DNA of 64,000 bases from Mobula birostris. Taxonomy: Eukaryota. Positions 26,205 through 56,472 of this stretch are shown one piece after another; within the stretch, counting starts at the first letter, position 1, and every line of letters starts with the position of its first letter. The translations under genes and the position numbers were made by a program. Location of the stretch: positions 16,345,939-16,409,938 of the forward strand of contig NC_092394.1 in NCBI RefSeq assembly GCF_030028105.1. Direction: 5' to 3'. The notes beneath the pieces were generated by a model, which was not told the DNA's origin, searched no databases, and saw nothing but the letters and a program-made list of their open reading frames with translations.

Positions 26205-27030
26205 TGCGCACTGGGAGTAGTGTTCAGTTCTGGTCACCTCATCATAGGAAGGGTGTAAAAGCTTTAGAGGGAGTGCAGAGGAGATTTACCTGGCGCTGCC
26301 TGGATAAGACAGCATGTCTCAATGAGGATAGGTTGAGCAAGCTAGGAGTTTTCTCTTTGGAGCGAAGGAGGATGAGAGGTGAATTGACAGAGATGCACAA
26401 GATAAGAGGCATAGATCAAGTGGATAGACAAACCTTTTCCCCAGGGCAGAAGTAGCTAATACAGGAGGCACAATTTTAAAGCTGTTGGAGGAAAATACAG
26501 TAGGGTTGCTAGAATTAATTTTTATTTTAAAAAAAACAGAATTCAGTGCATTAAACGGCCGGCTGGTGGCACAGTGGCATCGGCACTGGACTCCGGAGCG
26601 AAGGCTCCCGAGTTTGAATCCAAGTCGGGCTGCCACTCCACACACACCGCACCCCCCCCCGTCCCCCCGGGCACACCTTCCATCCATGCCGGGTTGAGCG
26701 TTGAGCTAGCCTCGTAAAAAACAAGGGTCGAGTCAGGAACGTTCATATCATGACCCGGTTAATCCTGACACTACGCACCAGACAAGAACGGCTGACTGTC
26801 TGGTGCGACACGCTAGGAAGGAAGTGCATTAAACATCCTCCCAGGAGTGGTAGTGGGGTTAGATACGCAAGGGGCATTTAGGAAACTTTTAGATAGGCAC
26901 ATGGAAGATAGAAAAAGAGAGTGTTATGTAGGAGGGAAAAGTTAGATTGATCTTAGACTGGGTTAAAAGGACAGCACACATTGTGGGCCAAAGGGTCTGT
27001 AAAGTACTGTAGTATTCAATGTTTTCCATT
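26205..27030 (+). mobile_element. CR1 LINE 3' fragment interrupted by a SINE
   Basis: VQFWSPH..K.V.ALEGVQRRFT and FSLERRRMRG peptides. Confidence 0.8.
26557..26822 (+). mobile_element. Young tRNA-headed SINE with RTE-like tail and 12-bp TSD
   Basis: A box TGGCACAGTGG and B-box-like GAGTTTGAATCC. TSD AGTGCATTAAAC at 26545-26556 and 26823-26834. CpG-rich. Confidence 0.85.
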
Positions 27031-33494: not shown

Positions 33495-34739
33495 TACATT
33501 TTAAGCTGCAGAAAGCAGCAGGGATGGAGGAAAAAGAACAATAGTGTGTGTCTGTGTGTGTGTATCACCAGGATTGAACCCAGGTCACTGGAACGGAGAG
33601 GCATCAGCCTTCAAGCTATGCCATGTGCTGTGCAGATGCTGGGCACCTGAAACAAAAACAGAAAATGCCAGGGGTACCTGGCATTCCAGCGGCATCCGAG
33701 GATGGCAGAACCCGGAGAGAAGTGTGGGGGAAAGTCACCACAAGTTAGTGGCTTATCATATAGTTAATGGGCCAAATGGTCTTATGTCAGCAGGATGGAA
33801 ACAAAAGGGGGGACGATTTTCCAAATTACACCTGTAGTTCTGAGGGAAAAATAGTCCATATGGCTTCATCTCCAGGTAGAAAGAGGGAGGGACAAAAAAA
33901 AAATGAGTAAGATACTCCAGTGCGCAGAACATCTGATACAGCATCATCCAAATTCTATATTTTGTCCCAGAAAATATCCCAGGACTCACTCCAAGAATAG
34001 CAGTGGAAAAGTGGACTAGAACCTTAGTGTAGTACGGGAAAGCAGTTTGCAACTCCCAAGCACTTAAGTGACCTCACACGCAGGTCAAAACTGAATTTCA
34101 GTGTCATATCTGTGCCAATGAACTACAAATATTCCACGTTTATTTCTTATACCACAGTTGCTCAGAGCCAGCAAGCTCTGAGGAACAGTTTTGTGACCTA
34201 TTTATCTGATTTTGGTAATATGTCTGGTGGGGAGGGGGTGGGGGGTTACTGCAGGCCTCACTTCTGGCAGCTTCACAGACATCGGGTCCCTCGAGGGGAA
34301 TCGTACGTTAACCGTAGGTTCACTGAAGGCACACAATAATTGCAAAGTGACAAATGATCTGCATCAAGACCTCAATCAATATTCTCACTTAAGATAGCCT
34401 GCAGTCATCACATTGTTCCCTCGTTGGCCACAGCAGGACCTGGTTCAGGTCGGGTCAAGTCTGGCAAGGCGTATGGGCTCAAGCCGGGTCAGACGCCGCC
34501 AGCCTGCCTTGGTACTTCTTCCAGACTGACTGCATGCATGCATCCATCAATCATCAATATTTGGGTTAATTTGATCACGGGACATGGATCCTGTTCACAT
34601 CAACACTACCGTCCATCCTGAAGCACCTCAATTCTAAAACCCAACATAGTGGGCAAATTTAATAAACAAAACAGGCCAACAGATCAATTGCACAATCATT
34701 TCCTAGGATTAGTACTTTTTTATTTTAAACTGATCCTGA

Positions 34740-35903
34740 TCCCACACAGGAGATTAGTGTGCAAACTTAAAGCACACGGTATTGGGGGTAAGGTATTGGT
34801 GTGGGTGGAGAATTGGTTAGCAGACAGGAAGCAAAGAGTGGGAATAAACGGGACCTTTTCAGAATGGCAGGTGGTGACTAGTGGGGTACCGCAAGGCTCA
34901 GTGCTGGGACCCCAGTTGTTTACAATATATATTAATGACTTGGATGAGGGAATTAAATGCAGCATCTCCAAGTTTGCGGATGACACGAAGCTGGGTGGCA
35001 GTGTTAGCTGTGAGGAGGATGCTAAGAGGATGCAGGGTGACTTGGATAGGTTGGGTGAGTGGGCAAATTCATGGCAGATGCAATTTAATGTGGATAAATG
35101 TGAAGTTATCCACTTTGGTGGCAAAAATAGGAAAACAGATTATTATCTGAATGGTGGCCGATTAGGAAAAGGGGAGGTGCAATGAGACCTGGGTGTCATT
35201 ATACACCAGTCATTGAAAGTGGGCATGCAGGTACAGCAGGCGGTGAAAAAGGCGAATGGTATGCTGGCATTTATAGCGAGAGGATTCGAGTACAGGAGCA
35301 GGGAGGTACTACTGCAGTTGTACAAGGCCTTGGTGAGACTACACCTGGAGTATTGTGTGCAGTTTTGGTCCCCTAATCTGAGGAAAGACATCCTTGCCAT
35401 AGAGGGAGTACAAAGAAGGTTCACCAGATTGATTCCTGGGATGGCAGGACTTTCATATGAAGAAAGACTGGATGAACTGGGCTTGTACTCGTTGGAATTT
35501 AGAAGATTGAGGGGGGATCTGATTGAAACGTATAAGATCCTAAAGGGATTGGACAGGCTAGATGCAGGAAGATTGTTCCCGATGTTGGGGAAGTCCAGAA
35601 CGAGGGGCCACAGTTTGAGGATAGAGGGGAAGCCTTTTAGGACCGAGATTAGGAAAAACTTCTTCACACAGAGAGTGGTGAATCTGTGGAATTCTCTGCC
35701 ACAGGAAACAGTTGAGGCCAGTTCATTGGCTATATTTAAGAGGGAGTTAGATATGGCCCTTGTGGCTACGGGGGTCAGGGGGTATAGAGGGAAGGCTGGG
35801 GCGGGGTTCTGAGTTGGATGATCAGCCATGATCATAATAAATGGCGGTGCAGGCTCGAAGGGCCGAATGGCCTACTCCTGCACCTATTTTCTATGTTTCT
35901 ATG
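34740..35903 (+). mobile_element. Young 5'-truncated CR1 LINE (RT C-terminal half plus 3' UTR)
   Basis: SGVPQGSVLGP and KFADDTKL motifs. One in-frame TGA (35183) separates the two ORFs. Ends in (TTTCTATG)2. Confidence 0.95.
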
Positions 35904-37106
35904 ATTAGTGACGTCACAAAATAACTAAATTTTCAGCTAAATTTTTCTTCGGCCCTTGACCTTTTCCACCCATCTCCTCCCAGCTTCTCACTTCATCCCA
36001 TCCACCTGGCTCTAACTTGTACTCCTCCCCACCTTCTCATTCCGACTTCTGCCCCCTTCTTTTCCAGTCCTGAGGAGGGGTCTCGGCCCAAAGCGTCGAC
36101 TGGTTGCTGCTTTCCAGAGGGAAAATGCTGGCTGAGATCCTCTGGCGTCTTGTACATGTTACTCCGGATTTCTAGCATCTGCAGAACCACTTGTGCTCAG
36201 TCACAAAATAACCACTCAGCACCTTCTCTAAACAAAAAGAAATGCATCAATCTTTTAAATTACCCGAATTTAGTACCTCTGCAAGGAAGTTCAAGACACA
36301 AATTCTTCAGCAAGACAAACACTAACTCGGCCAGCACCTGCTATCTTGCCAGAGCAGTCCAATCGTGTTTTTTAAATGAGGGTCTCCCCTCCCCTTGAAT
36401 GTGGCACCCCAGAGAGGGGGAAAAAACCCATTCACGTTGTCTCAGATTGACCGCTTATAATTTCCCCCAATGGCAAGCAGTGTTCAGGAGGCAGCTCTAA
36501 GGCTTCAGAAGGCTCTGAAGATTTGCTGCTGTATGGTTTACGATGCTTGAACCCATTGCTGTTAACTGTCTCAAAAACATGTTATGATCCAATTAATGCC
36601 AAGATCGAAAAGGTACTTTGTGGACTTTAATCTAAACGAGATTAAGTTTCAAGGTTTAGCTCCAAACAGATTTTTCAAACTTTAACAACAATTTGGCATT
36701 TATTTAGCGATAGCGCGTGTAGTAGGCCCTTCCAGCTCTTCGAGCCATGCTGTCCCTGGACAAACCTGACTAATCCCAACCTCATCACAGGACAATTTAC
36801 AATGACCAATTAACCAACTATGTCTTTGGTCTATGGAAGGGAAAAAAAAATTACATCGAGCAGCCAGGGAAAAATCCACGCATTTTCCATGGGTTGACGT
36901 ACAGACGGCACCAGAATTGAACTCTGAACTCCAGCATGCCCCGAACTGTAATAGCATCACACTAACCACTACTGTGACCTTGTCTGGGAGCAAATGTTCT
37001 GCAGAAGCCTCTGACCCCAGTGAGAATTCTTTTGGTTGGAAGATGTTGGACTTGTCTATGAAGTACAGGCCATCACCACGATAGGAAACTACTTAATAGA
37101 CACTAC

Positions 37107-38026
37107 CTCTAAGCACATCTTTCCCTCCCCCCCCCTCTCTGCATTCCGCAGGGATCGCTCCCTACACAACTCCCTTGTCCATTCGTCCCCCCCATCCCTC
37201 CCCACTGATCTCCCTCCTGGCACTTATCCGTGTAAGTGGAACAAGTGCTACACATGCCCTTACACTTCCTCCCTTACCACCATTCAGAGCCCCAAACAGT
37301 CCTTCCAGGTGAGGCAACACTTGACCTGTGAGTCGACTGGGGTGATACACTGCGTCCGGTGCTCCCGATGTGGCCTTTTATATATTGGCGAGACCCGACG
37401 CAGACTGGGAGACCGCTTTGCTGAACATCTACGCTCTGTCCGCCAGAGAAAGCAGGATCTCGCAGTGGCCACACATTTTAATTCCACATCCCATTCCCAT
37501 TCTGACATGTCTATCCACGGCCTCCTCTACTGTAAAGATGAGGCCACACTCAGGTTGGAGGAACAACACCTTATATCCCGTCTGGGTAGCCTCCAACCTG
37601 ATGGCATTAACATCGACTTCTCTAACTTCCGCTAGGCCCCACCTCCCCCTCGTACCCCATCTGTTACTTATTTTTATGCACACATTCTTTCTCTCACTCT
37701 CCTTTTTCTCCCTCTGTCCCTCTGAATATACCTCTTGCCCATCCTCTGGGTCCCCCCCCCTTGTCTTTCTTCCCGGACCTCCTGTCCCATGATCCTCTCG
37801 TATCCCTTTTGCCAATCACCTGTCCAGTTCTTGGCTCCATCCCTCCCCCTCCTGTCTTCTCCTATCATTTTGGATCTCCCCCTCCCCCTCCAACTTTCAA
37901 ATCCCTTACTCACTCTTCCTTCAGTTAGTCCTGACGAAGGGTCTCGGCCTGAAACGTCGACTGTACCTCTTCCTAGAGATGCTGCCTGGCCTGCTGCGTT
38001 CACCAGCAACTTTGATGTGTGTTGCT
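37107..38026 (+). mobile_element. 5'-truncated Penelope-like element with an open GIY-YIG ORF
   Basis: VIHCVRCSRCGLLYIGETRRRLGDRFAEH...HF...E...GIN. 14-bp TSD TTAATAGACACTAC at 37093-37106 and 38027-38040. Near-identical to 4821-5810. Confidence 0.92.
37927..37962 (+). ncRNA. Intact minimal type-I hammerhead ribozyme motif
   Basis: Stem I agtc/gact, core CTGACGA, stem II agg/cct, GAAA, loopless palindromic stem III ACGT, GUC cleavage triplet ending at 37958. Confidence 0.8.
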
Positions 38027-38481: not shown

Positions 38482-39837
38482 ACAGTACCATTTAAGGGGG
38501 AAAGTCCCAATCCTTCCCCCTCCCTCCCCCACCCCCAAACATGGAGGCAAGATCCTCTACAGTTCAAATAAGACAGAACATCAAAAAGCAGCCTGATCCA
38601 TTCCAGATTAACTAACTCCACAGCAGAACCACACACAAGTTATCTTCTGCCCCACAGTAAAATGAGCTTGGTGGATGGTCCCTTGAAAAGCAAGCACCAC
38701 CCCAGCATGCAAATTCTTGGTAGGCAGATCATCAATAGTGTAACCAAACCCTGGCTACTGCTTTGGTTAAACAAAGTATTAAATGGATCCAGCCATTGAA
38801 GAATCGAGTTCATTAGCAATAGCAAGTTGGAATAATCCAGCCTCGCTTGAGGCTGCAGAAAAACAATTTCCTGTGCAAAATGCTTTCCCAACAGTCATGC
38901 ATCAGGAACATTATTAGTATCGTGTGAGCAATGTTTGCACAGAAAACACTGGTTCCTTTCTGGTCATATTGTAGAAGGGCACGAGCTTATTTCAGCTGCG
39001 GGTGGGGGGGGGTGGATTTATTGTGTTCCCATCCAGCCCCACCCCACATCACCAAAATGAGACGCAGCATCCTCAGTCTCACATCCCTAATCTCCTTCAC
39101 ACACTTCTAAACACTTTTATCGTCTCGTCTCAAACTAAATTATGTAACTGTCACCACATACTACCTTGAGATTCGTTTTCTTACAGGCACCCACAGGAAA
39201 AAAAAAGAATCTACAAAAAAAAACCATAAACGTACAGAAATTATATATAAATCATACACAAGAGAACAGAGCGAGTCGACAGCCAGGTCAGAAACGGCTA
39301 GTACAAGGGGGCAAAGTTTTAAGACTGGTGGACAGTATAGCAGGGGGTGGGGGAGATGCCAGGGCAAATTTTACTTATTTATTGACATACAGTGTAGAAC
39401 AGGCTCTTCTGGCCCTTCAACCCTCCACTTAACCCTGGCCTAACCACAGGGCAATTTACAATGGCCAATCAACCTACCAACCGGTAGGTCTTTGCACTGT
39501 GGGAGGGAAACCCACGCGGCCACGGGTAGAATGTACAAACTGCTTACAGGCAGCGGCGGGACTTGAACCCTGGGCCGCTGGTACTGTAAAGCATTAAGCT
39601 AGGCTCTACACTACCACGTTCATTACACTGCGGTGAGTGATGGAACACCTTGCCAGGGCTAATGGTAAAGGCAGACAAACTAACAACATTTAAGAGACTC
39701 TCAGACTGGCACATGGATGTCAGAAAAATGGCAGGGGAGGTGGGGAAGCTGTGTGGGAATGAAGGGCTGGATTGACCTTAGCGTAGGTTAAAAGATTGGC
39801 ACAACATTGTGGGCCGAGGGGTCTGTACTGTACTGTA

Positions 39838-40032
39838 GGGGTGTATGGGGTGTCAGGGAGGGTTAGCACCTCTGGTGGGGGAACATGTCTCGTCCTTTTC
39901 AGGGCGGTTAGTCCACCTTTGGTCCCCACCTGGCACTCAGCTCTCACCTGTGGCTCCCCGTAGCTGTTCGCATGCGACAGCAGCCACACCCCGGGCCAAC
40001 GGCTCTGACAAGCCCGCTAAACCAGGTGAGGG
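39838..40032 (+). ncRNA. HDV-like self-cleaving ribozyme candidate
   Basis: P1, P1.1, P2, P3 and P4, an L3 starting UCCCCG, and J4/2 CUAA are all present in the correct order (coordinates in findings). Confidence 0.75.
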
Positions 40033-40400
40033 TAGCCGACAGGTCTCAAACCCTCGGTGAGATAGGGAGATACCTATGCCAGCATGTGAAGACAGACTCT
40101 GGTGGATTGAGCAGACGAGACCAATGGAAGGTCCAACGGTCAAGAAGGCGGTCTCTGCAAGTGTCGTGGAACGTGTAGAGCACGACAAGACACAGAAGAC
40201 ATCCTGGTCATCCACTGCACCTAGTCCCATCTCCAGCCATCTCGATTCTGTCTTGCCACTGGATCCAGGTGGGAATTGGGAAGCGAGAGTGAGGCTGACA
40301 CTGCGCAACTCTCCCTCACTTAAATCCAGATCACGCGCTAGTCTCGACACCATCAATGGTGTCGAGGTCTTCATCGACGACGATGATAGACGAACAACAA
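39838..40400 (+). mobile_element. Non-autonomous RTE-like retroposon (5' UTR plus 3' tail, no ORF)
   Basis: Inserted in a CR1 tail. TSD TACTGTA(G) at 39831-39838 and 40404-40411. (CAA)n 3' end. No tRNA A/B boxes seen. Confidence 0.8.
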
Positions 40401-42059
40401 CTATACTGTAGTATTCTGCGTTCAGTACCTGCAGAGGTGAGATAGGCCAACCATCCTGGTTGTTTCCGACTGGGATTGTTTGCTGTTCACAGGCCTGTGG
40501 AGGATTTCTGTTGCAAACAAAGGCAGACCAACAACAAATGCGCAAAAGACAAACTGTGCAAAAAAAAATAATGAGAACGCGAGTTGTTTCCGGTGCAGGT
40601 CAATGGAACCAAGCAGAATAATAGTCTGACATGGACTCGATGGGCTGAAGGCCCTGTTCCTATGACTGACTCTAAAAGAGTTCTTGAAAGTGAGTCTAGT
40701 TCATAGAATCAGTTTGGGATTGTGGCGAGTGAAGTTAAGCACGCCAGTTCGGGAGGTGTTGTCATGATGGCGTTTACGCGCTGGTCCCAGAACAGAAGCT
40801 CTGATGCGTTAACACCAAGGAATTTAAAGCTACTGACCCTCTCCATCTCCGATCCCCCTAATGAGAACTGGCTCACGGGCTCCCAGCCTCTTGCTCAGTT
40901 ACAGCGACGGAGATACAATACAGAAAGAGGCCTTTCGGGCCATCATGTCCTTACTGAACATCAAGCAGCTACTTCAACTAATTAATCCCATTTTTATTCT
41001 CCCCACATGTTCCTCAACTGCCCTCTTATCCGAACACGAGGAGCCATTTTGTGCCACATCACCATGACGAGCCGCACATACTTGGGAAGAAACTGGAAGC
41101 CCATGAAGTCCTGAGGACATGGAAACTCAGATGGAAGTTTATTAAGCCAGGTCTATGACGATGCAAGACAGTGGTTCTACTAGCTACATACGCCACTGTG
41201 CCACTCACAACAAAAGACACTGCCGATCCTTAAACCAAGAAGCCACAGTTGTATAACATTGCTTACAGTACAGCAAGTTTCCGGTTGCCAACAAGCCTCA
41301 AAATTCACTCCATGTGGGAAAAAAAAGGCGGGGTGCTGGAAATTACACCCCTATTCCCACAAAACCCTTGGAACTCAGGTGGTATACAAAATGGTACCTG
41401 TAGCTGTTCCATTCTGTCTGTGCAGCTCTGAAGAGGAGAGGTGCCTGCAATAGTCACACACCCACAGGCAAATATACTTAAGTTCTCCTTAGCCCTCGTT
41501 TCCAACTCCTATTGGGCCTACTGCCATGTTCCTCCCCCAAACAGTGCATGCATGGAGTTAATTGCCTCTGTGAAGATTTATTTTAATCATAAAGAAAATG
41601 CTGGGAATGCAAGTCAAAACTTCTCCTCCTCCTTCCCGCCCCTCAATAAAACTGCTTGGCAACTTCAGAGTTTTAGACATGAAACTAATTTGGAATCACC
41701 AATAGCTTGCCCCAATATGGAAAATGGACCTCCACTGCCCTGTGGCTCAGGAGCAGGGTGACTCAGATAATCCTCCAGACCAGGGATTGACAGGTTGTTC
41801 TTTTCACCATGTTAAGATTCTACCAGTTCCCAGAGGTTCTGCTGGGCATTGTCAAGGTCTGCTTCAACTTGTTATTTCGGGAGGTCAGTGGTAAGGTAGT
41901 TGTGATCACTGACAACAGCAAATTGGACAACATCCTACAATAATTCAGCTCAGGACTGAACCTTCCTAGTCTGGAGCCCAGATACGAACATTTTAAATTT
42001 GGAAATGGGGAAGTAAGAGAGACCTGTGTACTTGGCACACAGGACAGCCAGTTAAACTC

Positions 42060-55977: not shown

Positions 55978-56472
55978 TATAGAACACAGAAATTTACAGC
56001 ACATTACAGGCCCTTCAGCCCACAATGTTGTGCCGACCATGTAACCTACTCTGGATCCTGCCTTGAATTTCTGTACCACATAGCCCTATTTTTCTCAGCT
56101 CCATATACCTATCCGAGAGTCTCTGGAAAAAACCCTATTGTATCCGCCTCCACCACCATCGCTGGCAGTGCATTCCACACACCCACCACTCTCTGTGTGG
56201 AAAAAAATTACCTTTGACATCCCCCTTGTACTACTTCCAATCACCTTAAAACTATGTCCCCTCGTGTTAGACATTTCAGCCTTGAGAAAAAGCCTCTCGC
56301 TATCCACACGTTCAATGCCCCTCATCACCTTTTATGTAAATTTTCATCCTCTGTCGACCCAAGGAGAAAAGGCCAAGTTCACTCAACCTATTCGCATAAA
56401 GTCGCTCTCCAGTCCAGCCAACATCCTTGCAGATCTCCTCTGCACTCTCCCTACAGAATCCGTATCCTTCTT
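55978..56472 (-). mobile_element. CR1 3' fragment
   Basis: MRGIERVDSERLF...TRGHSFKV peptide. Confidence 0.8.

What the first reader, a model, noticed from the sequence alone, without database searches (positions are those of the whole stretch)
39838..40032. Complete HDV-like ribozyme fold forming the exact 5' end of an ORF-less retroposon
Seen in sequence: P1 GGGGUGU (39838-44, repeated at 39847-53) pairs with ACACCCC (39986-92). A long J1/2 contains a GGUGGGG/CCCCACC helix. P2 CUCUCACCUG (39941-50) pairs with CAGGUGAGGG (40023-32). P3 GGC (39952-54) pairs with GCC (39983-85). L3 begins UCCCCG, matching HDV U20-C21-C22-N-C24-G25. P1.1 is CC with GG (39993-94). P4 is CGGCU (40000-04) with AG(C)CCG (40011-16). 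J4/2 is CUAA, with the catalytic-C equivalent at 40017. The predicted cut, 5' of G1, coincides with the element boundary defined independently by the TSD. Established: HDV-like ribozymes process the 5' ends of R2, L1Tc and some RTE retrotransposons. Inference: this is a ribozyme-headed, promoter-less, SINE-like family that cuts itself out of host read-through transcripts and borrows an RTE LINE for mobility. I am not aware of it being described in cartilaginous fish but cannot search.
Basis: partly seen in the sequence, partly recalled or inferred. Interest (0 to 1): 0.85.

Follow-up and report, generated by a model that had tools for sequence, protein, structure and literature searches.

The report
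Ribozyme-like head of ray retroposon
A 566-base jumping-gene copy in a ray genome begins exactly at an RNA fold with nearly all the parts of the self-cutting hepatitis-delta ribozyme, a known way for such elements to trim their own front end, here with an unusual extra hairpin and with cutting still untested.

Summary

**More than chance.** My own HDV-type descriptor hits only this locus in the window. It hit 0 of 400 whole-window shuffles and 0 of 10,000 local shuffles.

**The element.** It is a clean 566-bp insertion, 39838-40403, with an 8-bp target-site duplication, inside the tail of an older repeat. It is not a true SINE. It is an internally deleted LINE: ribozyme-like head, the LINE's first ~82-90 codons, and a ~60-nt two-hairpin tail.

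**Support for the ribozyme.**
- The 96-nt J1/2 folds into a rod (z -3.15).
- The core is about 94% conserved in translations of two other subfamilies, against about 26% just downstream.
- Changes at paired sites mostly keep pairing.
- 7 of 9 other copies begin at the same unit.

**Against.**
- No Rfam HDV match.
- L3 is 28 nt.
- The cleavage-site pair is G-C, not the required G.U.
- No compensatory double change was seen in the core.
- No cleavage data exist.

This scan has already flagged the family many times on other DNA of the same genome. Verdict: a probable HDV-like ribozyme head, a new variant of a known kind.

The parts
39752..39837 (+). 3' part of an older, very abundant host repeat into which the element inserted; it resumes at 40404
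   Evidence: BLAST of 39700-40600 against the window finds copies at 26927-27012 (+) and 55995-56052 (-). The copy at 26927-27012 reads straight through the insertion site. Depth is very high in all 4 runs.
39830..39837 (.). Target-site duplication, 5' copy (TACTGTAG)
   Evidence: Same 8 letters at 40404-40411. It extends to 10 of 11 matches if 39827-29 and 40401-03 are included.
39838..40403 (+). The inserted element (566 bp): an internally deleted LINE copy
   Evidence: TSD on both sides. Contig depth collapses after about 40396 in all 4 runs. Listed contig pieces from other organisms begin at 39837/39838 in 4 of the 6 pieces that reach the 5' region (table 8; 32 of 55,278 pieces shown).
39838..39844 (+). 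P1 5' strand; the predicted cut is 5' of G39838
   Evidence: 7 Watson-Crick pairs with 39986-39992, duplex -11.8 kcal/mol. P1 also appears in the plain MFE.
39845..39940 (+). J1/2: 3-nt linker, a long rod (P1.2-like; base 39848-57 / 39929-38, which uses the second GGGGUGU unit), 2-nt linker
   Evidence: Folds alone to -43.6 kcal/mol, z -3.15, with 1 of 200 shuffles as good. Without 39845-53 it reaches only -31.6, z -0.62.
39941..39950 (+). P2 5' strand
   Evidence: 10 pairs (one G.U) with 40023-40032, duplex -15.8 kcal/mol.
39952..39954 (+). P3 5' strand (GGC)
   Evidence: Pairs with GCC 39983-85, which abuts P1'.
39955..39982 (+). L3, 28 nt: UCCCCG (39955-60) followed by an inserted hairpin (stem 39963-67 / 39977-81 plus 39969-70 / 39975-76)
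   Evidence: Hairpin -7.8 kcal/mol, z -1.91. Its translated sequence is conserved in two other subfamilies, with only C39969>U, which keeps the pair.
39983..39994 (+). P3 3' strand (39983-85), P1 3' strand (39986-92), and the GG of P1.1 (39993-94, pairing with C39957 and C39956)
   Evidence: C39992 pairs with G39838 as G-C. It is inferred to be U in the 6-member P0015 group.
39995..40016 (+). J1.1/4 and P4 (40001-04 / 40011-14, loop 40005-10; the 40000/40015 pair is mismatched C.C in this copy)
   Evidence: -4.7 kcal/mol. The family majority in 4 organisms has G at 40015 (89-95% of depth), which pairs with C40000.
40017..40022 (+). J4/2 (CUAAAC); C40017 is the candidate catalytic cytosine
   Evidence: The C is retained in the translations of the P0015 group, the P0060-68 group and P0007.
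40023..40032 (+). P2 3' strand
40076..40411 (+). 111-codon ORF: the first ~82-90 codons are the start of the parent LINE's ORF, the rest reads through the tail
   Evidence: 63% identity over 52 aa to P0005 and 52% over 67 aa to P0008, both of which continue into endonuclease-like sequence. No Pfam family for the ORF itself.
40343..40403 (+). 3' tail: two adjacent hairpins (40343-66, 40367-91) and a short non-poly(A) end
   Evidence: 40330-40403 folds to -28.5 kcal/mol, z -4.68, 0 of 200 shuffles as good. A tail-like stretch follows a second, separate match in P0011.
40404..40411 (.). Target-site duplication, 3' copy

Best explanation
39838-40403 is one dead copy of a very abundant ray retroposon family. 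The family arose by internal deletion of a LINE and keeps three things:
- the LINE's 5' head;
- the first ~82-90 codons of its ORF;
- its ~60-nt structured 3' tail.

The head (39838-40032) is most likely an HDV-like self-cleaving ribozyme of the 'large' type. P1 and an extended 10-bp P2 are pinched together by a structured J1/2 rod. P3, L3, P1.1, P4 and J4/2 form the catalytic core, with C40017 as the general acid.

Inferred mechanism. A source copy is transcribed as part of a longer RNA. The head folds and cuts 5' of G1, which gives the element RNA a defined 5' end. The tail hairpins are recognised by the parent LINE's reverse transcriptase for target-primed reverse transcription. New copies therefore begin exactly at G1 and carry target-site duplications.

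Shown here: the fold's parts, the exact coincidence with the insertion boundary, the family's abundance, the uneven conservation, and the LINE ancestry of the ORF start.

Inferred, not shown: cleavage itself, read-through transcription, and which LINE supplies the enzyme.
For: - **Parts of the fold.** All of them sit at the stated coordinates on the element's sense strand.
- **Chance.** The strict descriptor is unique in the window. It hit 0 of 400 whole-window and 0 of 10,000 local shuffles.
- **Boundary.** G1 is the first base after the TSD, and uninterrupted host-repeat copies define the insertion.
- **J1/2 rod.** It folds into a rod closing 3 nt from P1 and 2 nt from P2 (z -3.15). That is the architecture shown to activate large HDV-like ribozymes with an extended P2 (PMC4908430, part 1 of the text read).
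- **Constrained fold.** With P1 forced and the P2, P3 and P1.1 strands kept free, the optimum is exactly rod + L3 hairpin + P4 (-67.9 kcal/mol). Adding P2 (-15.8) and P3 (-2.6) makes it competitive with the nested MFE of -81.4.
- **Uneven conservation.** In translations of other subfamilies, 17 of 18 codons are the same over 39941-39994. Only about 10 of 39 are the same over 40044-40160.
- **Changes at modelled pairs.** In the core helices, the changes inferred in the P0015 and P0060-68 groups keep or restore pairing at 39969, 39992, 40011, 40014 and 40015. One breaks it (40024). In the J1/2 rod, 39933 keeps its pair and 39875 and 39876 lose theirs.
- **Agreement between data sets.** Five of those inferred letters equal the family-majority letters in the laid runs.
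- **Window copy versus family.** None of the 10 listed family-variant positions in 39838-40032 falls in P1, P2, P3, P1.1, UCCCCG or J4/2 (40 of 128 rows shown).
- **5' ends.** 7 of 9 P0060-68 copies start homology at the first unit (39839-42) behind unrelated flanks.
- **LINE ancestry.**
- **Precedent.** HDV-like ribozymes at the 5' ends of RTE, R2, R4 and L1Tc elements (passages in PMC3774820 and PMC6765202).
Against: - No Rfam HDV-type family matches, even at E up to 10 on 211 bases.
- The cleavage-site pair is G39838-C39992, not the G.U wobble. PMC1874588 (passages) says that wobble is specifically required in HDV.
- The base before the cut in this copy is G, the least favourable in HDV (same paper).
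- L3 is 28 nt with a hairpin. I found no described HDV-like ribozyme with such an insert, so activity cannot be assumed.
- No compensatory double change was seen in P1-P4. The only one is in the J1/2 rod, and it rests on a 0.7-agreement consensus of loose ends.
- In two subfamilies position 40024 is inferred to be U, which would break a P2 pair. That holds unless its partner 39949 differs too, and 39949 is a silent codon position that I could not see.
- The nested MFE of the whole head is not unusual (z -0.57).
- Precise 5' ends are equally expected from an internal promoter.
- My comparative evidence is indirect.
- Three related loci from a metagenome (L001-L003) share only 40210-40355 and show no HDV-type fold upstream.
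Confidence: 0.62

Rival explanations
1. The head is a conserved structured 5' UTR that works as something else: an internal promoter or initiator, a binding site for the LINE protein, or a translation-initiation element. It does not cleave. On this view the HDV-like pairings are partial mimicry or a decayed relic.
For: - No Rfam HDV hit.
- G-C instead of the required G.U at the cut site.
- An L3 of 28 nt has no precedent that I could find.
- Internal promoters also give precise 5' ends. The conservation seen shows selection on the segment, not cleavage.
- No core covariation was seen.
Against: - The full set of HDV motifs in the right order and spacing is not expected by chance: 0 of 400 and 0 of 10,000 shuffles.
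- Substitutions in P4, the L3 hairpin and P1 are of the pair-keeping kind, and loops vary freely. That points to constraint at the RNA-structure level.
- The pinched P1 / J1/2-rod / long-P2 layout matches active large HDV-like ribozymes.
Confidence: 0.22
2. The fold is real, but the working P1 uses the second GGGGUGU unit (39847-53). The cut would then fall 9 nt inside the element, and the first unit would be leftover upstream sequence, as in R2 elements that cut upstream or downstream of the junction.
For: - The descriptor matches both registers equally.
- 2 of 9 P0060-68 copies begin at the second unit.
- R2 ribozymes are known to cut away from the element junction (PMC3774820 passage).
Against: - 7 of 9 copies and this copy include the first unit right after unrelated flanks or the TSD.
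- Using 39848-57 as the base of the J1/2 rod is worth about 12 kcal/mol (-43.6 against -31.6) and raises z from -0.62 to -3.15.
Confidence: 0.1
3. Chance: a GC-rich, repeat-containing stretch that happens to allow the pairings, with no function for the element.
For: - With helices only, such arrangements occur about 0.3 times per shuffled window.
- The whole-head MFE has z -0.57.
Against: - The strict descriptor hit 0 of 400 and 0 of 10,000 shuffles.
- It coincides exactly with the insertion boundary.
- The core is about 94% conserved against about 26% downstream between subfamilies.
- The same fold was noted in many other copies by this scan (unchecked notes).
Confidence: 0.04

Closest known systems
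Large HDV-like ribozymes of mosquito retrotransposons (drz-Agam-2 family; RTE association as stated in reviews)
   Same: - Double-pseudoknot core at the very 5' end of a non-LTR element.
- A structured J1/2 domain (P1.2) joined by short linkers.
- An extended P2: 12 bp there, 10 bp here.

Sources: PMC4908430, part 1 read; RTE and baggins association in a PMC6765202 passage.
   Different: - Here L3 carries a ~19-nt hairpin and the cleavage-site pair is G-C.
- The host is a cartilaginous fish.
- Activity is untested.
- The Rfam models, which include mosquito HDV-like families by my recollection, give no hit.
R2 SIDEs (Short Internally Deleted Elements) of Drosophila
   Same: A non-autonomous element made of the parent LINE's 5' ribozyme joined to its 3' end by internal deletion, and mobilised by the parent's enzyme (PMC3414825, abstract and outline seen).
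   Different: - R2 SIDEs are rare and site-specific in rDNA.
- This family is dispersed, hugely abundant in several ray species, and keeps ~82-90 codons of the ORF.
L1Tc / NARTc of Trypanosoma cruzi (L1TcRz within Pr77)
   Same: An HDV-like ribozyme in the first nucleotides of both the LINE and its truncated non-autonomous partner (abstracts in the listings).
   Different: There, the same 77 nt also act as an internal promoter. The ribozyme is compact. The hosts are protists with polycistronic transcription.
R2 ribozymes of silkmoths and other arthropods
   Same: Very long J1/2 (216-498 nt), a conserved block of P1.1, P3 and L3, and a variable or absent P4 (PMC3774820 passages).
   Different: In those ribozymes the 15 nt of P1.1, P3 and L3 are compact. 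No hairpin within L3 is described in the passages I saw.
Genomic HDV ribozyme
   Same: - The order P1, P2, P3, L3, P3', P1', P1.1, P4, J4/2, P2'.
- L3 beginning U-C-C-N-C-G.
- GG after P1'.
- C-N-A-A in J4/2.

The HDV numbering is recalled from memory, not from a call.
   Different: - G1:U37 wobble required (PMC1874588 passage), against G-C here.
- J1/2 of a few nt, against 96.
- L3 of about 8 nt (recalled), against 28.

Membership tests
HDV-like self-cleaving ribozyme | P1 of 6-7 bp whose first nucleotide is the cleavage site | tested here: met
   7 Watson-Crick pairs, 39838-44 / 39986-92. P1 length range from PMC4908430.
HDV-like self-cleaving ribozyme | G.U wobble pair at the cleavage site (G1:U37) | tested here: not met
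   G39838-C39992 is Watson-Crick. PMC1874588 states that the wobble is specifically required in HDV. U is inferred at this position only in the 6-member P0015 group.
HDV-like self-cleaving ribozyme | P2 crossing P1 to form the outer pseudoknot | tested here: met
   10 bp, 39941-50 / 40023-32, -15.8 kcal/mol.
HDV-like self-cleaving ribozyme | 3-bp P3 whose 3' strand abuts P1' | tested here: met
   39952-54 / 39983-85, with no gap to 39986.
HDV-like self-cleaving ribozyme | Short L3 carrying the conserved U..CC..G letters | tested here: inconclusive
   The letters are present (UCCCCG, 39955-60), but L3 is 28 nt with an inserted hairpin. No precedent was found.
HDV-like self-cleaving ribozyme | P1.1: two L3 cytosines pair with GG directly after P1' | tested here: met
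   C39956 and C39957 with G39994 and G39993 are possible. Formation cannot be predicted by the nested folding tools.
HDV-like self-cleaving ribozyme | J4/2 with a catalytic C followed by N-R-A before P2' | tested here: met
   C40017-U-A-A-A-C, then P2'. The C is kept in the other subfamilies' translations.
HDV-like self-cleaving ribozyme | Match to a curated covariance model | tested here: not met
   No HDV-type Rfam family at the gathering score or at E up to 10. The long insertions may explain this, but I could not test that.
HDV-like self-cleaving ribozyme | Covariation supporting the helices | tested here: inconclusive
   Only pair-keeping single changes were seen: 39969, 39992, 40011, 40014, 40015 (core) and 39933 (J1/2 rod). 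There is one unexplained break at 40024 and two in the rod at 39875/39876. One double change lies in the J1/2 rod, from a loose-end consensus. DNA of the other copies was not obtainable.
HDV-like self-cleaving ribozyme | Site-specific Mg2+-dependent self-cleavage | not testable with these tools
   No raw RNA reads were on offer. All listed runs are contigs and none is on record as RNA.
Internally deleted, ribozyme-headed non-LTR retroposon (SIDE-like) | Target-site duplication and a defined 5' end at the ribozyme's first base | tested here: met
   7 of 9 other copies start at the same unit.
Internally deleted, ribozyme-headed non-LTR retroposon (SIDE-like) | 5' part collinear with an autonomous LINE | tested here: met
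   ORF residues 1-66 and 31-82 align to P0008 and P0005. These continue into sequence whose relatives carry PF03372 or PF14529.
Internally deleted, ribozyme-headed non-LTR retroposon (SIDE-like) | 3' end shared with the same LINE | tested here: inconclusive
   One protein (P0011) shows a tail-like stretch at a second place, E 5e-4 in a two-sequence comparison. No full-length parent was seen.
RTE clade partner | Parent reverse transcriptase and endonuclease grouping with RTE | tested here: inconclusive
   Relatives of the P0005 endonuclease part include 2 of 39 named 'craniofacial development protein 2'. That name is tied to RTE/BovB only by my recollection. No RT was seen and no tree was built. 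Earlier scan notes call it RTE (unchecked).
SINE (pol III head) | Head derived from tRNA, 7SL or 5S RNA | tested here: not met
   ARAGORN finds no tRNA in 39300-40700. No Rfam family reaches its gathering score anywhere in the window.

The most novel reading that the evidence does not exclude
The head is an active HDV-like ribozyme of a new structural subclass. A conserved hairpin is inserted in the catalytic loop L3, just after the U-C-C-N-C-G letters, and the pair at the cut site is Watson-Crick G-C. The hairpin is kept because it does a job, for example as a folding clamp or a binding site for the LINE protein. This ribozyme would have driven one of the most abundant repeat families of rays.

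The parent LINE's ORF start is also found at 52-63% identity in two sea-slug (Elysia marginata) proteins. That would point to horizontal transfer between phyla.
Probability: 0.3. Interest if true: 0.6.

Novelty: new variant of a known kind. Interest (0 to 1): 0.42.

Why it matters
HDV-like ribozymes that trim the 5' ends of non-LTR retrotransposons are established in insects, nematodes, trypanosomes and R2 elements.

If this head cleaves, it would show the same trick driving a very high-copy, internally deleted LINE family in cartilaginous fish. It would also show that the HDV catalytic loop tolerates a whole hairpin insert and a G-C pair at the cut site. Both bear on what the minimal rules of this fold really are, and on how descriptor or covariance-model searches miss members.

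Practically, the family supplies thousands of natural variants for testing those rules.

For genome annotation, it says these 'short non-coding retroelements' should be filed as deletion derivatives of a LINE, not as SINEs.

Tried and rejected
**Rfam.** Scans of the whole window, of 39700-40500 and of 39830-40040 found no ribozyme family. They gave only weak snoRNA- and miRNA-like hairpin hits, which I disregard.

**Copies in the window.** None other than the element itself.

**Copies elsewhere, by DNA.**
- The exact 20-mer in metagenome contigs gave 0.
- A 19-letter pattern in genome contigs gave 10 bacterial loci and in viral contigs gave 1. These match the pattern and little else (19-21 letters; 38 in L004), so they are chance hits.

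**Copies elsewhere, by protein.**
- The search for homologous proteins on the 111-aa ORF found nothing.
- The representative search found 15.
- The search for related loci with alignment A2 gave three metagenome loci. They share only 40210-40355 and have a different upstream region, with no HDV descriptor match and no Rfam ribozyme. They did not help with covariation.

**Automatic single-frame tblastn mapping** of translations onto the structure gave spurious changes downstream of a frame shift, so I discarded it. The frame-aware versions replace it.

**P0003, P0004, P0007 and P0013** are decayed copies with deletions or broken helices. I left them out of the pair counts. P0007 alone shows 2 breaking changes in P2. 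They show that dead copies decay, as expected.

**Readings considered and rejected.**
- A DNA transposon with terminal inverted repeats: the ends are not inverted repeats (read directly).
- A tRNA-derived SINE.
- The L3 hairpin's own loop as the true L3: it lacks the CC needed for P1.1.

**Not done.**
- The window's Penelope-like element is unrelated.
- Depth differences between bins were not used as evidence, because the tool warns that contig depth cannot rank parts.
- I did not see supplementary files of any paper. Those of PMC3774820 and PMC4908430 hold ribozyme structures that might show L3 or G-C variants.
Full report
**1. What is there**

The pair list computed from the window is as follows:
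- P1: G39838-U39844 with A39986-C39992, 7 Watson-Crick pairs.
- P2: 39941-50 with 40023-32, 10 pairs, one of them G.U.
- P3: 39952-54 with 39983-85.
- P1.1: C39956 and C39957 with G39994 and G39993.
- P4: 40001-04 with 40011-14.
- A hairpin inside L3: 39963-67 with 39977-81, plus two more pairs.
- J4/2 reads CUAAAC from C40017.

**2. The insertion**

The window stretch 39752-39838 belongs to an older repeat with two further copies in the window. The copy at 26927-27012 runs straight through the point where our element sits. The 8 letters TACTGTAG flank the insert at 39830-37 and 40404-11. The element is therefore 39838-40403, 566 bp, and G39838 is its first base. This boundary is independent of any RNA model.

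**3. Is the fold more than chance?**

- The nested MFE of the head is ordinary (z -0.57).
- No Rfam HDV-type model matches, at the gathering score or at E up to 10.
- I wrote a descriptor with the family's order of elements and its short motifs, relaxed enough to admit a long J1/2 and an L3 of up to 35 nt. It hits only this locus on both strands of the window.
- It hits nothing in 400 dinucleotide shuffles of the window and nothing in 10,000 shuffles of 39838-40060.
- With the helices alone (plus the GG after P1' and an L3 beginning NCC), chance gives 120 loci in 400 shuffles. The combination of helices with UCCNNG, GG, CNRA and P4 is what is rare.
The figures are therefore upper-quality hints, not a clean test.

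**4. Architecture**

- J1/2 (39845-39940) alone folds into a rod of -43.6 kcal/mol, z -3.15, with 1 of 200 shuffles as good.
- The base of the rod uses the second GGGGUGU unit and closes 3 nt after P1 and 2 nt before P2. Without that unit the rest folds to only -31.6 kcal/mol (z -0.62). This favours P1 at 39838 over the alternative register at 39847.
- If P1 is forced and the strands of P2, P3 and P1.1 are kept unpaired, the best nested fold is exactly rod + L3 hairpin + P4 (-67.9 kcal/mol). P2 (-15.8) and P3 (-2.6) then make the pseudoknotted fold competitive with the -81.4 of the best nested fold.
- A structured J1/2 domain joined by short linkers to P1 and an extended P2 is what Webb et al. 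found to activate large natural HDV-like ribozymes (PMC4908430, part 1 read).
- J1/2 of 216-498 nt occurs in silkmoth R2 ribozymes (PMC3774820 passage).

**5. What the element is**

- It carries a 111-codon ORF, 40076-40411, with no Pfam family.
- A search of 1.84 billion representatives found 15 relatives.
- Two of them are Elysia marginata proteins, GFS06416.1 and GFS13404.1. They share the ORF's start: 63% over 52 aa and 52% over 67 aa. They then continue into sequence whose 38 relatives often carry the endonuclease families PF03372 or PF14529. Two of those relatives are named craniofacial development protein 2.
- Homology to these parent-type proteins ends near ORF residue 82.
- The last ~60 nt form two adjacent hairpins (z -4.68, 0 of 200 shuffles as good), with no poly(A).
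- A tail-like stretch occurs at a second place in P0011.

The element is thus an internally deleted LINE: head, ORF start and tail. It is like the R2 SIDEs (PMC3414825, abstract) and not a pol III SINE. The partner's clade was not established here.

**6. The family**

- Twenty runs from eleven studies and at least nine organism labels hold part of the element. None is on record as RNA.
- I laid contigs of four organisms at 80% likeness. Between 9,195 and 16,568 contigs per run lie on the stretch, and depth collapses after about 40396.
- The window copy differs from the family majority in run X1 at 26 of the 29 listed variant positions inside the element. 40 of 128 variant rows were shown.
- Ten listed positions lie in 39838-40032: 39863, 39890, 39902, 39910, 39969, 39982, 39996, 40005, 40006 and 40015. 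None is in P1, P2, P3, P1.1, UCCCCG or J4/2.
- The majority G at 40015 turns this copy's C.C mismatch into a C-G pair.
- A frequent loose end 'before 39914' (168-246 contigs per run) shows a subfamily with a diverged apical J1/2. In its consensus (agreement about 0.7) the pair 39891/39906 changes from C-G to U-A.

**7. Other subfamilies, seen through translations**

The DNA of other copies could not be fetched. I therefore used stored proteins that happen to read through the head: the P0015 group (6 members) and P0060-P0068 (9 clusters, 23 members). I mapped them frame by frame onto the window.
- They agree with the window in 17 of 18 codons over 39941-39994, which covers P2 5', P3, L3 with its hairpin, P3' and P1'.
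- They agree in 10 of 18 codons over 39990-40043, which covers P4 and its surroundings.
- They agree in about 10 of 39 codons over 40044-40160.
- In the core helices, inferred changes keep or restore pairing at 39969 (C-G to U.G), 39992 (G-C to G.U, P0015 group only), 40011 (U-A to U.G), 40014 (G-C to G.U, P0015 group only) and 40015 (mismatch to C-G).
- In the J1/2 rod of the P0060-68 group, 39933 (U.G to U-A) keeps its pair, while 39875 and 39876 would lose theirs. Their partners lie in a frame-shifted part that I could not map.
- Position 40024 (A to U) would break a P2 pair. Its partner 39949 is a silent third codon position in these frames, so a compensating change cannot be seen.
- Five inferred letters (39969, 39996, 40005, 40006, 40015) equal the majority letters, which supports the method.
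- These are inferences by parsimony from amino acids, not read DNA.

**8. 5' ends**

In the nine P0060-68 proteins the sequence upstream of the head is unrelated from copy to copy. Homology to the window starts at 39839 in six of them (in P0064 the ungapped alignment runs three unmatched-looking residues further, to 39830), at 39842 in one, and at the second unit (39845 or 39848) in two. It fits ribozyme processing, but it would also fit an internal promoter.

**9. Against the ribozyme**

- The cleavage-site pair is G-C. For HDV itself a G1:U37 wobble is 'specifically required', and G at position -1 is the worst (PMC1874588 passages).
- L3 is 28 nt. Searches for an L3 insertion in HDV-like ribozymes found nothing relevant.
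- There is no covariance-model match, no core double compensation, and no RNA or cleavage data.

**10. Comparison and novelty**

The principle is in print: an HDV-like ribozyme defines the 5' end of RTE, R2, R4, baggins and L1Tc elements and of their deletion derivatives. I saw this in passages of PMC3774820 and PMC6765202, in the abstract of PMC3414825, and in the listing abstracts for L1Tc/NARTc. Searches combining ribozyme or HDV terms with shark, skate or elasmobranch terms, and HDV-like with RTE, SINE or non-autonomous terms, returned no paper on such an element in cartilaginous fish within the held library.

This scan has noted the same family many times on other DNA of this genome. Two follow-ups reached the same reading; those are unchecked notes.

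I rate it a new variant of a known kind. The probability that the family's head is a working ribozyme is about 0.6. Interest is moderate, and rests mainly on the conserved L3 hairpin and the G-C cut-site pair.

Noticed in passing
proteins P0005 and P0008 (NCBI GFS06416.1, GFS13404.1): Two Elysia marginata (sea slug) proteins share the ray element's ORF start at 63% and 52% identity, and then continue into a LINE endonuclease. This means either horizontal transfer of the LINE between phyla or foreign DNA in that assembly.
   Followed up: partly
window 34649-37815: A Penelope-like element: an ORF with RVT_1 (E 3.7e-17) at 34649-35185 and a weak GIY-YIG match (E 0.0016, below Pfam's cut-off) at 37036-37635.
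   Followed up: partly
window 39752-39837, 26927-27012, 55995-56052: A very abundant older repeat tail, the deepest bins in all four laid runs. It served as the insertion target. Its last letters resemble the element's first repeat unit, so microhomology at the 5' junction is possible.
   Followed up: partly
window 39834-39858: A 9-nt unit repeated 2.9 times across the TSD/element junction (TRF). The doubled unit at the element's 5' end is also present in the P0060-68 subfamily, so it is a family feature and not a slip in this copy.
   Followed up: partly
L001 1670-1860 and L002 362-552: Two metagenome contigs (ERZ1740055) carry a related ORF-start segment behind a shared, structured ~190-nt upstream region of different sequence. 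That region also contains GGCUCCCCC followed by a hairpin. No HDV descriptor or Rfam match was found.
   Followed up: partly
window 39556-39620: By eye, a stretch on the minus strand resembles a tRNA T-arm, as in tRNA-derived SINEs. ARAGORN calls no tRNA there.
   Followed up: partly
window 40354: In 20-26 contigs per run, family copies carry an extra AT in the loop of the first 3' hairpin (table 4). The loop varies while the stem is kept.
   Followed up: no
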